A stretch of 63,417 bases of DNA, the filler included, from Olpidium bornovanus S191 (lineage: Eukaryota > Fungi > Olpidiomycota): the NCBI GenBank assembly GCA_017911155.1. It is 29 parts of 29 records of this genome, joined end to end, with 100 filler letters (N's around TTAATTAATTAA, not from the genome) between each part and the next. Parts side by side here need not be neighbours in the genome. Positions count along the whole stretch, not along the records: positions 20,408 to 23,354 come from JAEFCI010000544.1; positions 23,455 to 24,541 come from JAEFCI010013087.1; 27 more parts are not named here. One strand, given 5' to 3'. Below the pieces are notes generated by a model. That model did no database searches. It saw nothing but the letters and a program-made list of their open reading frames with translations, and had not been told where the DNA came from. Below are positions 20,229-23,888 of the stretch, piece by piece. The position numbers and the translations under genes are program-made. Each line of letters starts with the position of its first letter. Position 1 is the first letter of the stretch.

Positions 20229-20522
20229 CCCCCCCCCCCCCCCCCCCCCGTCCATCCTCCCGCCCCGGGCAGGGAGAACCTACGCATCAGAAGGTCGCCT
20301 GGCGGCCNNNNNNNNNNNNNNNNNNNNNNNNNNNNNNNNNNNNNNNNNNNNTTAATTAATTAANNNNNNNNNNNNNNNNNNNNNNNNNNNNNNNNNNNNN
20401 NNNNNNNCAAAAAATACATAGAACGGGAGCAATTTGTCTTTTCGATCGTCCCTCGAATACAATCAAGTCTATATACAAAACGAAAATGGAAAGAAGAAAA
20501 CGAGGGGTTTCGATGCGCGGTT

Positions 20523-21994
20523 TCATGACGGTGTCGGGGTCTTGGAGCCGACGGGCTTGCCTTCGTTCGTTTCGAGTTTCGCCTCGAGGTCAATGCGCTC
20601 CTTTGCCCGAAAGACCTTCGCTTGGAGGTAGGGAGAGCCGCCTTGCGACTGCTCGTTGGCTCGGAAAAGGTGCTCGTATTTCTGCGCGGATGAGAAGACG
20701 GCGGTGGCGGGTTACAGGTGATAAGCGGGCGCAACGAGCAAATTCGGCCCGAAAAATCCTTCAATATGCCCAAAGGGCGGGGAAAAACGCGGACAGACGC
20801 ACGGGAGCGCCGGACTAACCTTGTTTATCTCCTGCACGTCCGAGTCTTTTCGGACGTTGAGAATCTGTCGCGCCTCTTCTATCGTCATGCCCGTTTGTCG
20901 TGTCAGATTCGACGCAGTTCGGGGCGCCGCATTCGCCGCCGCGTTCTTGCTACTTTGTGCGGCATCTACGCGCGGTCGGGTGTGGCGCGAAAACAAGCAA
21001 CTATCCGAGTCAGTTGACACCTTCCTTTGCGAGCGGAGGTCACAGACGAAAGGGGGTGGTGCTGCACTGCACTCCTTGATGAAAAAACAATCTTAATCAA
21101 GGAAATCTAATTCCTCCCGCCCGCGCGGGGCATTTAACAGTCCCGGCACAACCGTACGCGCGCCGGCACACCCGCTTCCAAGTATCGACTGAGCGCAAAC
21201 CGGGATGTGCCCCGACGATGTCGGCTGCAGCCGCGAGTTGGAGCGCAGCAAGCTCCCGATCGTCGCCGCAAAATTAGCCTCCGCTGGAACAACGATACCA
21301 TTAGCACGCGGCAAAAGGCCTTCCCGGCATGCTGCCTAAAGCCGGCGCCTGGCTTTCCGGGTCGGCCCAAGTACCCTGAAAAGCCAGAACTGGAAGTCGA
21401 AAGCTTCTTCCCCTCCCCCTTTCTTCCCACTGTCGCCAAGGCCGTCAAGCTCCGGCCACTCACTGATTGCGGCCTGCTTGTACGCTGCAGCAAACGCCTT
21501 CGCAAGGATCGTGCCTCCCGCTATAATAATCTGCACAATTATTCTGGGCGCTGACTGGTTCCGTTCGCAGCACAGTAGAAGGGGACGTTTCGAACGGGCA
21601 GCGCGGGAAAGCACCGGAAACACCGGGAGGAGTGCCAACGTGAAAACAGAGCGAAAACTCGTCAGGCGTGTGAACCAGGAGCCAAACCAAGTTCTTTTTC
21701 TTTTTCTTCTGTATTTTCTCCCGGCCGCCACTAAAACGCGCAGCGCAAAAAAAAAAAACCCCCCACAAAAACGTGCACGCTCCTGTCGTCGAAAAACAGC
21801 CTGCCCCCCCCTGCCCCCCTCCCCGCCATGTTCTTCTCCCGCCTCTTTTCCTTCCCCCGTTCAGTCGGTCTCTTCGGGCGGGCCCGCAGGCGAGGAGGCG
21901 GGGGGCGCCTTTCGCGCCCGCAACCTTCCCCGCCCAACCCCGATTTTCAGTGGGCGGGGGGGGACCAGCGGCCGAACGGCAACGAGCGTACCAT
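20523..21994 (-). CDS. PAM16: mitochondrial import motor J-like subunit Pam16/Tim16, four exons
   Basis: Spliced reading: M|[30 protein letters not shown]|N...[13 protein letters not shown]...|[30 protein letters not shown]. Stop is at 20523. The 3-nt first exon (ATG|gt at 21994) is my best guess. Confidence 0.93.
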
Positions 21995-22157
21995 TTGCGA
22001 GCGGGTCGCCGCAGGCGGTCCTGAGATGGGGCAAGGGACAAGGCGGACGGGAGAGTTTTGTTGGTTTTGAGGAGGGGAAAAGGGGGAGGAGGAGGAGGAA
22101 GCGGGCGTGCGCGTGTGGGGCGGGCGGCGGGTGTTGGTTTTTTCGATTTTTTTTTTT

Positions 22158-22189
<32 letters not shown>

Positions 22190-22582
22190 CCTTTTTTTTT
22201 TTTTTTTTTTTTTTTGTTTTCGAGGAGGGCTGCGCGGCGGCGGCCCCTGCACCCCTCCCTCAACATAAAACGGCGCGTGGGCAATTTGGACATCCCCGTT
22301 TTGCGCTTTTTCCCCTGTGCCGCTGGTAACACGGCGGCAGCGCTGAGAAGTGAGAAGTTCTTCCGCAGTCGTAGGCTAATTCCAGAAGACGTCTAAGTAA
22401 CTCTACACGGTAGAGGAAAACGGTTCGCGGGCGTTGGCTTTTGTGGGGCAACATCTCGCCGTGTGGACGCGCGCTAACCGCCACACCCCTGCCCGATTGC
22501 AGCACGACAGGAAACAAGCCCCAACGTTATAACATTACCTGTTGGAATGGCTTCGCAGGGCGAGCCAGACACCTGGTGAATA

Positions 22583-22654
22583 GGGCAGATAGCTCAGTTG
22601 GTATAGCGTCCCTCCGGGAAAGGGAAGGTCCCGAGTCGACCCTCGGTTGGCCCA
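22583..22654 (+). tRNA. tRNA-like sequence in LTR1 (anticodon loop CCGGGAA; 1-nt T-loop deletion)
   Basis: GGGCAGA TA GCTC AGTTGGTA TAGC G TCCCT CCGGGAA AGGGA AGGTC CCGAG TCGACC CTCGG TTGGCCC A. Confidence 0.75.
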
Positions 22655-22806
22655 CGTTTGATGCGCAACAGCTTATGAGCCCAATCGTGACTTTGTCCCC
22701 CCGATTATGGTTGCGCGGGTGGCCTAGCCCTGTTGACAGCAGTAGATGCCTGGCTAAATGGGGGTGTTGGAATGGTTTTGCAGGCGAGCCAGACACCTGG
22801 TGAATA

Positions 22807-22879
22807 GGGCACATAGCTCCGTTGGTAGAGTGTCCCTCTGGGAAAGGGAAGGTCCCGAGTTCGACCCTCGGTTGGCCCA
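22807..22879 (+). tRNA. 73-nt tRNA-like sequence in LTR2 (anticodon GGG, Pro-like), followed by TTTT
   Basis: GGGCACA TA GCTC CGTTGGTA GAGT G TCCCT CTGGGAA AGGGA AGGTC CCGAG TTCGACC CTCGG TTGGCCC A. The anticodon and T stems are perfect; the acceptor stem has 2 mismatches. Confidence 0.8.
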
Positions 22880-23888
22880 CTTTTGATGCGCAACACAGCA
22901 CGACAGGAAACAGGCCCCAACGTTATAACATTACCATCACCCGAACACCATTGAAGTCCAATGAAACAAGGTCGTCCCACTGGCTCACCGGCAATCCTGA
23001 ATTAGATCGACTCTAAGATATGATGCTTCTTTGTGCGGCTCCCACTTATTTTGTCGGAAAAAAGCACGATGAGGATTAGGATGACCGGTAACGGCTGCAA
23101 TTTTACGGGGTTTCCGGCGAGAAGGGTGTCTCTGAGATGCAGAAAGGAGCGGTTTCATCGTCCCATCACTCAAAGGTGATCGTAAAAGGGTAGAGTATCA
23201 GAAATCTTACAAGGATAACGAGAACAGGCTCATCATGTGCTCACACCAGGTTCTTGCGAAGCAATCAAGCATATTCCATAATCCCGCCTGTCGGGTATGT
23301 TGCAAATCATAAAATGAGCCTCGTTTCATCGCCGGCAGTCATAAATCTGATTGGNNNNNNNNNNNNNNNNNNNNNNNNNNNNNNNNNNNNNNNNNNNNTT
23401 AATTAATTAANNNNNNNNNNNNNNNNNNNNNNNNNNNNNNNNNNNNNNNNNNNNCCCGCCCCAAGCGGCGGGTGGGCCCGTTTGATCATGCCGCTTTCGG
23501 CTCGCCGGATGCGCATCACACTGGTGCCGTAGCAAAGCGAACACCGAATGCCGGGCAGCCGCGGCCGATCGGCACACCTGCGGGCCGCGGCCGGCATTTA
23601 CGTTTCATAACGTTCCGGCCAACCACTCCCGTGTCACTCTGCAGGAGCGGCGATACCACGGGAAACCGTAAGCGGATAACGGTGGGGCGGCCTCCACTTT
23701 CTGCTTCAGATGCGCCGAGAAGTCAATGCTGACTCCCAGGGCATGAAAAGAACGGCAGGCCGCAAAACGACTGCTCCTTCGGCCTCCGCGCACCCTATCA
23801 CAGCTAAAACGAGGTACTTTAAGCCGTTGTTTTTAGCGTGTAGGAGTGGTAGGGGTGGAGGGGATGGTGGGCGGGAGAGGGCCGGCAG

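What the first reader, a model, noticed from the sequence alone, without database searches (positions are those of the whole stretch)
22540..22895. Miniature LTR retroelement whose LTRs each carry a whole tRNA-like gene (a tRNA analogue of Cassandra)
Seen in sequence: two 131-bp LTRs (TGTTG...CAACA, 10 differences) flank a 94-bp non-coding core. The core starts with GCTTATGAGCCC and ends with a purine tract (AAATGGGGG) abutting LTR2. Each LTR holds a 72-73 nt cloverleaf with an A box (TAGCTCAGTTGG), a B box (GAGTTCGACCC) and, in LTR2, a TTTT terminator. Established: GGTTATGAGCCC is the PBS complementary to the anticodon stem-loop of initiator tRNA-Met, used by Ty5 and Drosophila copia (11/12 match here). 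Plant Cassandra TRIMs carry 5S rDNA Pol III promoters in their LTRs. Inference: this may be a fungal non-autonomous copia-type TRIM that has captured a tRNA gene, either as an internal Pol III promoter or as a targeting/silencing-evasion device. I am not aware of a described tRNA-in-LTR TRIM family, but I could not search for one.
Basis: partly seen in the sequence, partly recalled or inferred. Interest (0 to 1): 0.92.

Follow-up and report, generated by a model that had tools for sequence, protein, structure and literature searches.

The report
tRNA-bearing miniature LTR retrotransposon (Helenus type)
This is a real 356-bp non-coding LTR retrotransposon of the fungus Olpidium bornovanus with a tRNA-like sequence in each LTR, but that kind of element was already described in 2024 as 'Helenus', so it is a new family in a new fungal phylum, and this copy is unusual only in being flanked by a 40-bp instead of a 5-bp target duplication.

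Summary
Two 131-nt direct repeats (TGTTG...CAACA, 10 differences) flank a 94-nt core. The core begins with an initiator-tRNA-Met anticodon-arm PBS and ends in a purine tract. Each repeat carries a tRNA-like unit scoring 45 and 51 bits against Rfam tRNA.

The piece is a whole 2947-bp contig of Olpidium bornovanus (GCA_017911155.1). Translating the element and searching proteins recovered four more contigs with copies. Three are full elements with perfect 5-bp target duplications (GTCAG, GGTCG, CTGAC). One is a tandem LTR-core-LTR-core-LTR array. The family consensus PBS is GGTTATGAGCCC (12/12), followed near the 3' LTR by a G-rich PPT.

So this is a mobile TRIM, most likely mobilised by a Copia-type element. 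What is new is the family and its host phylum; Helenus in fungi was reported only from Basidiomycota.

That is best read as uncoordinated integration of the two cDNA ends. Individual copies decay neutrally and show no covariation. Pol III transcription remains untested.

The parts
22500..22539 (+). Left copy of the 40-nt flanking direct repeat (aberrantly long target-site duplication), abutting the 5' LTR
   Evidence: the repeat finder family D3. A pattern search gave only these two matches and none in shuffles. The repeat is absent from the other four contigs.
22540..22670 (+). 5' LTR, 131 nt, TGTTG...CAACA
   Evidence: It aligns with 10 other LTRs of the family at about 93% mean column identity.
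22583..22654 (+). tRNA-like unit in the 5' LTR. The A box is at 22590-22601. The B box is damaged by a 1-nt deletion.
   Evidence: Rfam RF00005 at 45.3 bits. ARAGORN does not call it.
22671..22682 (+). Primer-binding site GCTTATGAGCCC, 11/12 to the family consensus GGTTATGAGCCC. The consensus is complementary to the anticodon stem-loop of initiator tRNA-Met.
   Evidence: Core alignment A6. The same 12-mer starts 47 internal regions in Kojima's Helenus consensus file. Complementarity to tRNA-iMet rests on established knowledge and on PMC10886601 section 3.6.
22671..22764 (+). Internal non-coding region, 94 nt. It has a 5-nt deletion relative to the roughly 100-nt family consensus.
22756..22764 (+). 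Polypurine tract AAATGGGGG abutting the 3' LTR (family consensus ..TCGAGGGGGGG)
   Evidence: There is a 15/16 match to the PPT/LTR junction of a Copia-like 3' end in L002.
22765..22895 (+). 3' LTR, 131 nt
22807..22879 (+). tRNA-like unit in the 3' LTR. The A box is at 22814-22825 and the B box at 22857-22867.
   Evidence: Rfam RF00005 at 51.0 bits. ARAGORN calls it tRNA-Pro(GGG).
22881..22884 (+). TTTT, a candidate weak Pol III terminator, starting 2 nt after the tRNA-like unit
   Evidence: Present in 10 of 11 LTRs. Its function is inferred.
22896..22935 (+). Right copy of the 40-nt flanking direct repeat, abutting the 3' LTR

Best explanation
The feature is one old copy of a non-autonomous miniature LTR retrotransposon (TRIM) family of Olpidium bornovanus. 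It belongs to the Helenus/TRIMp3 type: each LTR is a 43-nt leader, a roughly 74-nt tRNA-derived module with A and B boxes, and a 16-nt tail (C-TTTT-GATGCGCAACA).

Proposed life cycle. Only the first step and the resulting structures are shown here; the rest is inferred.

1. RNA polymerase III starts at the tRNA-like +1 in the 5' LTR. It reads through that LTR's weak T4 signal and stops at the T4 in the 3' LTR. This would give an RNA of about 310 nt with U3 = 43 nt, R of about 78 nt and U5 of about 12 nt.
2. A Copia-type reverse transcriptase supplied in trans primes minus-strand synthesis from a 3'-truncated initiator tRNA-Met annealed to GGTTATGAGCCC. The G-rich PPT primes the plus strand.
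3. The Copia integrase inserts the TGTTG...CAACA-ended cDNA and normally makes a 5-bp target duplication.

In the window copy the two cDNA ends were joined to the target 40 bp apart rather than 5 bp apart. This is uncoordinated integration, and gap repair then duplicated 40 bp of host DNA.

The tRNA-like module is not a working tRNA gene. After insertion the copies decay neutrally.
For: Structure: searches show the LTR / PBS / PPT / tRNA-like anatomy.

Mobility:
- Homologous copies lie on four other contigs of the same assembly, in unrelated flanks.
- Perfect 5-bp TSDs are read directly from the sequence: GTCAG in L002 (element 1662-2020), GGTCG in L003 (317-681) and CTGAC in L005 (355-716).
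- In L002 two paralogues of the surrounding repeat lack the element. One has a single GTCAG at the homologous point and the other has GTTGA there (D11/I3).
- L004 carries a tandem LTR-core-LTR-core-LTR array, as reported for Cassandra and for the Helenus family LTR-11_DR.

Family consensus: PBS GGTTATGAGCCC and PPT ..GAGGGGGGG.

tRNA module: it is present in all 11 LTRs, 89% of cloverleaf cells pair against 25-54% in slid controls, and ARAGORN of 11.

Copia link:
- The iMet anticodon-arm PBS and 5-bp TSDs are the Copia signature used by Kojima.
- The PPT/LTR junction matches a Copia-like 3' end in L002 at 15/16.
- One copy sits inside a degenerate gag_pre-integrase/rve ORF, so Copia-type elements exist in this genome.

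Long duplication: uncoordinated integration is documented to produce long duplications, for example a 273-bp one for XMRV (PMC2857682).
Against: - No transcript data exist, so Pol III initiation, T4 read-through and termination are all inferred.
- The absence of other T4 runs inside the element is what chance would give (P about 0.76).
- MFE folding does not give a cloverleaf and is no more stable than shuffles.
- No full autonomous partner with a matching PBS and matching termini was recovered.
- The L002 pol fragment has no Pfam or PDB hit. Calling it Copia RNase H rests on motif knowledge only.
- In the XMRV precedent one LTR end was damaged, whereas both ends here are intact.
- The empty site for the 40-bp duplication was not observed. 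The contig comes from a fragmented metagenome-derived assembly, so the duplication has not been verified in reads.
Confidence: 0.8

Rival explanations
1. It is an ordinary Pol II-transcribed TRIM in which the tRNA-like segment is only a passenger. On this reading the segment is the remnant of a tRNA-derived SINE that once inserted into an LTR, and it has no promoter role.
For: There is no covariation, and the tRNA-like part has no lower substitution density than the rest of the element (0.082 against 0.055 and 0.083 per site). Kojima himself proposes a SINE2-into-LTR origin. No transcripts are available.
Against: Only 43 nt lie upstream of the tRNA-like unit, which leaves little room for a Pol II promoter plus R. 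The module fills more than half of every LTR and is retained, with A box, B box and a following T4, in the family consensus. Because the LTR distances are star-like, post-insertion decay says nothing about selection on the master copy.
Confidence: 0.12
2. It is a locally duplicated genuine tRNA-Pro gene pair. On this reading it is a segmental or tandem duplication that supplies functional tRNA, not a transposon.
For: ARAGORN and Rfam both call tRNAs here. The 40-bp flanking repeat is not a canonical LTR-element TSD.
Against: - The same LTR-core-LTR unit occurs on four other contigs with different flanks and 5-bp TSDs.
- A PBS and a PPT sit exactly at the LTR boundaries.
- An A.G mismatch at acceptor pair 5:68 is present in all 11 copies, and the consensus has C rather than the universal U at position 33.
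- From general knowledge, a GGG anticodon is not a normal eukaryotic tRNA-Pro species.
- The MFE fold is not a cloverleaf.
Confidence: 0.02
3. It is a dimeric tRNA-derived SINE moved by a LINE through target-primed reverse transcription. That would naturally give a long, variable target duplication such as 40 bp.
For: The 40-bp TSD of the window copy is in the LINE/SINE range. The element has a tRNA-derived head with A and B boxes.
Against: There is no poly(A) or simple-repeat tail. The terminal repeats are complete and identical in structure, with TG...CA ends, which requires LTR-type reverse transcription with two strand transfers. A PBS and PPT are present. Three other copies have exact 5-bp TSDs.
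Confidence: 0.03
4. The 40-bp flanking duplication is not an integration product. It is either an assembly artefact or a later rearrangement of a normally integrated copy.
For: The contig is 2.9 kb and comes from a fragmented metagenome-derived assembly. Repeats are error-prone in short-read graphs. No empty site or read evidence could be examined.
Against: The two 40-mers differ at one base and the two LTRs at 10 positions, so they are distinct paths rather than a collapsed loop. Both 40-mers abut the intact TGTTG and CAACA termini to the base, which is the geometry of a target duplication. No simple graph path from a 5-bp-TSD allele produces A-LTR...LTR-A.
Confidence: 0.15

Closest known systems
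Helenus (TRIMp3), fungal families of Pucciniales and Agaricomycetes (Kojima 2024, PMC10886601)
   Same: - TRIM architecture with a tRNA-derived sequence carrying A and B boxes in both LTRs.
- Total length of 356-365 bp, inside the reported range of 311-1263 bp.
- PBS GGTTATGAGCCC for the anticodon arm of tRNA-iMet, which is the dominant fungal type.
- LTRs starting TGTTG.
- 5-bp TSDs in three of the four copies where both flanks can be read.
- A tRNA-like unit that gene finders call but that is probably non-functional.
- Tandem arrays, which Kojima reports for the fish family LTR-11_DR.
   Different: - The host is Olpidium bornovanus (Olpidiomycota). Kojima's fungal hosts are all Basidiomycota.
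- No element-specific k-mers are shared with his consensus file; only the PBS is shared. It is therefore a separate family, possibly of independent origin.
- The anticodon reads GGG ('Pro'), which is not among the isotypes he lists.
- The window copy has a 40-bp TSD.
Cassandra (plant TRIM with 5S rRNA-derived Pol III promoter in its LTRs)
   Same: A non-autonomous miniature LTR element whose LTRs carry a small-RNA-gene-derived internal Pol III promoter followed by a T-run. It also forms tandem arrays (PMC7215508 title and abstract).
   Different: The module here is tRNA-derived, not 5S-derived; there is no 5S hit in Rfam. The host is a fungus, not a plant. Cassandra has transcript evidence and this element has none.
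Ty5 / Drosophila copia-type autonomous elements (Copia superfamily with half-tRNA-iMet priming)
   Same: The PBS is complementary to the anticodon stem-loop of tRNA-iMet. TSDs are 5 bp. Termini are TG...CA. The PPT/LTR junction is similar to a Copia-like fragment in the same genome.
   Different: There is no gag or pol. The LTRs are only 131 nt and are mostly tRNA-like. The element must be mobilised in trans.
tRNA-derived SINEs (SINE2)
   Same: A tRNA-derived head with A and B boxes, a short non-coding element, and inflation of tRNA gene predictions.
   Different: SINEs have one head and a LINE-derived or A-rich tail, and they move by TPRT. This element has two LTRs, a PBS, a PPT and 5-bp TSDs.

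Membership tests
Helenus / TRIMp3 (Kojima 2024) | TRIM structure: two short direct LTRs flanking a short non-coding internal region | tested here: met
   131-nt LTRs and a 94-nt core. Reading frames across the element are the usual chance frames with no recognisable coding content, and the annotated ORFs that overlap copies have no Pfam domain apart from the Copia part of P0125. Other copies are 359-365 bp.
Helenus / TRIMp3 (Kojima 2024) | tRNA-derived sequence with box A and box B inside the LTR | tested here: met
   Rfam tRNA at 45-52 bits. ARAGORN of 11 LTRs. The consensus has A box TAGCTCAGTTGG and B box GAGTTCGACCC.
Helenus / TRIMp3 (Kojima 2024) | PBS directly after the 5' LTR and PPT directly before the 3' LTR | tested here: met
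   The consensus has GGTTATGAGCCC at core positions 1-12 and ..GAGGGGGGG at the core's end.
Helenus / TRIMp3 (Kojima 2024) | 5-bp target-site duplication (fungal and plant Helenus) | tested here: met
   Met for the family: GTCAG (L002), GGTCG (L003) and CTGAC (L005). Not met for the window copy itself, which has a 40-bp duplication.
Helenus / TRIMp3 (Kojima 2024) | Interspersed multi-copy family | tested here: met
   Copies lie on 5 contigs, giving 11 LTRs and 7 cores. Total copy number and solo LTRs could not be counted because the assembly is not searchable with these tools.
Helenus / TRIMp3 (Kojima 2024) | Transcription from the internal Pol III promoter. This is the meaning of 'p3', and it is unproven for Helenus in general. 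| not testable with these tools
   No expression data are available. The T-run pattern is uninformative.
Helenus / TRIMp3 (Kojima 2024) | Trans-mobilisation by a Copia-superfamily element (fungal Helenus) | tested here: inconclusive
   The PBS type and TSD length fit. The PPT/LTR junction matches a Copia-like 3' end at 15/16. Copia-type gag_pre-integrase/rve remnants are present. No intact partner with the same PBS and termini was recovered.
Cassandra | 5S rRNA-derived sequence in the LTR | tested here: not met
   cmscan at E<=1 found tRNA only and no 5S_rRNA.
Functional tRNA-Pro gene | Intact cloverleaf with canonical invariant positions, maintained by selection | tested here: not met
   An A.G mismatch at pair 5:68 is present in all 11 copies. 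The consensus has C at position 33. There are no compensatory changes and no reduced substitution rate. The MFE fold is not a cloverleaf.

The most novel reading that the evidence does not exclude
This would be the first Helenus-type (tRNA-in-LTR, TRIMp3) family outside Dikarya, in the zoosporic fungus Olpidium bornovanus. It has the same tRNA-iMet half-primer PBS and TGTTG termini as rust Helenus but no other shared sequence. That implies one of two things: repeated independent births of such elements wherever half-tRNA-primed Copia elements and tRNA SINEs coexist, or a partnership dating to early fungal evolution. In addition, the window copy would be a natural, fixed example of uncoordinated integration by a Copia-type integrase, with a 40-bp target duplication and both ends intact.
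Probability: 0.5. Interest if true: 0.4.

Novelty: new member of a known kind. Interest (0 to 1): 0.3.

Why it matters
- It extends a class of mobile element described in 2024 from Basidiomycota to an early-diverging fungal phylum. That bears on whether tRNA-in-LTR TRIMs arise repeatedly or are ancient.
- It has a practical consequence for annotation. tRNA finders will over-call 'tRNA-Pro(GGG)' genes in this genome.
- At least five annotated 'hypothetical proteins' of the NCBI assembly (P0121-P0125) are translations of this element.
- If confirmed in reads, the 40-bp duplication is a rare natural record of the two ends of an LTR-element cDNA integrating out of register.
- None of this opens a long-standing question, so the finding is of modest specialist interest.

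Tried and rejected
- Two scans of JGI metagenome contigs found nothing. One used an LTR-specific pattern and one used an LTR-end+PBS pattern. So no copies outside the one assembly and no orthologous empty site were obtained.
- P0123 could not be located by exact look-up. Its contig was reached through P0124 instead.
- The covariation test on the cloverleaf gave 0 compensatory pairs and no excess over shuffles. With star-like LTR distances this is expected and does not discriminate between hypotheses.
- Substitution density was compared between the tRNA part and the rest of the element. There was no sign of constraint.
- Depletion of T4 runs inside the putative Pol III transcript was tested and is not significant.
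- MFE folding of the tRNA-like units gave no cloverleaf and non-significant z-scores.
- The L002 pol fragment was searched against Pfam and PDB with no hits. I rejected using it as tool-based proof of a Copia partner.
- I considered whether the 40-mer belongs to a longer LTR, to a tandem unit or to another repeat. The core neither begins nor ends with any part of it, and it occurs nowhere else in the five contigs.
- I considered a 5-bp TSD hidden inside a pre-existing tandem 40-mer. TTACC and CAGCA do not match, so I rejected it.
- Element-specific k-mers were searched in Kojima's consensus file. Only generic tRNA D-arm matches in bivalve families were found.
- L002, L003 and L005 did not appear in the script sandbox. 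Analyses there used the stored alignments and pasted sequence.

Full report
**Origin of the piece.** The piece 20408-23354 is an entire 2947-bp contig (JAEFCI010000544.1) of the Olpidium bornovanus metagenome-derived assembly GCA_017911155.1. Its only clear gene is a Pam16/Tim16 homologue on the minus strand. The spliced product matches the NCBI protein P0001 at 97% and its next relatives are chytrid and zygomycete proteins. The NCBI taxonomy places the species in phylum Olpidiomycota. By my conversion of the reversed-locus coordinates, the gene model spans about 20523-21994, so the finding lies about 0.5 kb upstream of it.

**The observation.**
- 22540-22670 and 22765-22895 are 131-nt direct repeats that start TGTTG and end CAACA. 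They differ by 8 substitutions and 2 one-base indels.
- The 94-nt core starts GCTTATGAGCCC and ends AAATGGGGG.
- Infernal matches Rfam tRNA in both repeats, at 45.3 and 51.0 bits against a gathering score of 29. ARAGORN calls the right one tRNA-Pro(GGG).
There is no 5-bp duplication.

**Is it a family?** No tool here searches eukaryotic assemblies by DNA. I therefore translated the element's open minus-strand frame and searched the protein database.
- The search hit five annotated 'hypothetical proteins' of O. bornovanus. Their contigs were then fetched.
- L002 (element 1662-2020), L003 (317-681) and L005 (355-716) each hold a full LTR-core-LTR element in unrelated flanks.
- Each of these has a perfect 5-bp target duplication: GTCAG, GGTCG and CTGAC.
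- In L002 the element sits in a locally repeated sequence, and two paralogues of that sequence lack the element. One has a single GTCAG at the homologous point and the other has GTTGA there (D11/I3).
- L004 begins inside a core and runs core-LTR-core-LTR-core-LTR. This is a tandem array of the kind known for Cassandra and for the Helenus family LTR-11_DR.
- L005's copy interrupts a degenerate Copia-type gag_pre-integrase/integrase reading frame.
- In total 11 LTRs and 7 cores were aligned.
- The family consensus has the PBS GGTTATGAGCCC, the exact complement of the tRNA-iMet anticodon arm. It has a PPT ending GAGGGGGGG and a T4 run starting 2 nt after the tRNA-like unit in 10 of 11 LTRs.

**What the copies say about function.**
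- LTR distances are star-like. The two LTRs of one element differ by 10-17 columns, no less than LTRs of different elements. The copies therefore stem from one burst and have since decayed independently.
- The cloverleaf is clearly encoded in the consensus: 89% of cells pair, against 25-54% when partners are slid. There are no compensatory changes.
- The tRNA-like part has no lower substitution density than the leader or the core: 0.082 against 0.055 and 0.083 per site.
- An A.G mismatch in the acceptor stem is shared by all 11 copies, and the consensus has C at position 33.
- MFE folding does not recover a cloverleaf.
- The module is thus tRNA-derived but is very unlikely to be a working tRNA. 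What it preserves at family level is box A, box B and the following T-run.
- Only 43 nt precede it in the LTR, which leaves little room for a Pol II promoter.
- I therefore favour Pol III transcription from the tRNA-like +1, with read-through of the weak T4 in the 5' LTR and termination at the 3' one. This gives U3 = 43 nt, R of about 78 nt, U5 of about 12 nt and an RNA of about 310 nt.
- This is inference. No expression data exist, and the lack of other T4 runs is what chance gives.

**Mobilisation.**
- The half-tRNA-iMet PBS and the 5-bp duplications are the Copia-superfamily signature (established for Ty5 and copia; used in the same way in PMC10886601).
- The TRIM's PPT/LTR junction TCGAGGGGGGG|TGTTG matches the junction at the end of a Copia-like pol fragment in L002 (TCGAGGGGGAG|TGTTG) at 15/16.
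- That fragment's assignment to Copia RNase H rests only on my recognition of the DSDYA..D / ITGY / W.S.KQ / SS.EAE motifs. Pfam and PDB searches returned nothing.
- No intact partner was recovered.

**The 40-bp duplication.**
- It abuts both intact termini exactly and occurs nowhere else in the five contigs.
- It cannot be part of a longer LTR or of a tandem unit, because the core neither starts nor ends with any of it.
- The simplest reading is integration in which the two cDNA ends attacked the target 40 bp apart, followed by gap repair.
- Uncoordinated integration giving long duplications is documented for retroviruses. One of 15 XMRV proviruses had a 273-bp duplication (PMC2857682), although in that case one LTR end was damaged.
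- Misassembly is unlikely, because the two 40-mers and the two LTRs are distinguishable. It cannot be excluded without reads.

**Comparison with what is known.**
Kojima (2024, PMC10886601) described exactly that class.
- His Helenus is 311-1263 bp and was found in fungi, animals and one plant. Fungal families mostly use the tRNA-iMet anticodon-loop PBS, make 5-bp duplications and are inferred to depend on Copia. Together with Cassandra and Ajax they form 'TRIMp3'.
- The Olpidium element meets every structural criterion of Helenus.
- His fungal hosts are Pucciniales and a few Agaricomycetes only, and Olpidium does not appear in the text or supplements.
- None of six element-specific k-mers occurs in his consensus file, whereas the PBS 12-mer occurs 47 times.
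- No later paper in the library mentions Helenus in such fungi. Repbase and Dfam could not be searched.

**Verdict.** This is a real, well-formed, mobile but old Helenus-type TRIM. It is a new family of a known kind in a new phylum, and this copy carries an unusual 40-bp target duplication. Interest is modest.

Noticed in passing
L004 1-626 (JAEFCI010009164.1): There is a tandem array of the element, core(partial)-LTR-core-LTR-core-LTR, cut by the contig end. The three LTRs differ from each other by 12-19 columns.
   Followed up: partly
L002, L003, L004, L005 (proteins P0121-P0125): Five annotated 'hypothetical proteins' of the NCBI O. bornovanus annotation are translations of the element's minus strand. 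P0125 fuses a Copia gag_pre-integrase remnant to TRIM-derived residues. ARAGORN of the 11 LTRs 'tRNA-Pro(GGG)', so tRNA counts for this genome will be inflated.
   Followed up: yes
Alignment A5 (11 LTRs): 35 of the 63 transitions away from the consensus fall on the 9 consensus CpG dinucleotides. This suggests deamination of methylated CpG in these repeat copies.
   Followed up: partly
window 22138-22217 and 21747-21830; also L004 947-968, L005 3940-3968: Very long T runs (about 80 nt in the window) and C/G-rich low-complexity tracts lie in the intergenic DNA upstream of genes. This appears to be a recurring feature of these contigs.
   Followed up: no
L002 2545-2416, minus strand: A second short LTR-like segment (TGTTAGATT...) is preceded by GAGGGG and followed by TTATGAGCCCAA. 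That 12-mer is identical to part of the TRIM's PBS region. The segment abuts a truncated Copia-like pol fragment of the opposite orientation. It may be another half-tRNA-iMet-primed element.
   Followed up: partly
L002 1-260, 268-1236, 2035-2227, 3300-3830: The contig is a mosaic of repeats. It holds a 25-bp A-rich satellite, tandem repeats of about 345 bp with a long inverted copy at the other end of the contig, and a 'GATTCTGA' minisatellite of about 23 bp next to the TRIM.
   Followed up: no
window 20523-21994, minus strand: The NCBI Pam16 model P0001 is 207 aa, whereas relatives are mostly 120-150 aa. My hand-spliced product of about 123 aa covers the conserved domain, so the deposited model may be over-extended at its N-terminus. 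The first exon with the ATG was not resolved.
   Followed up: no
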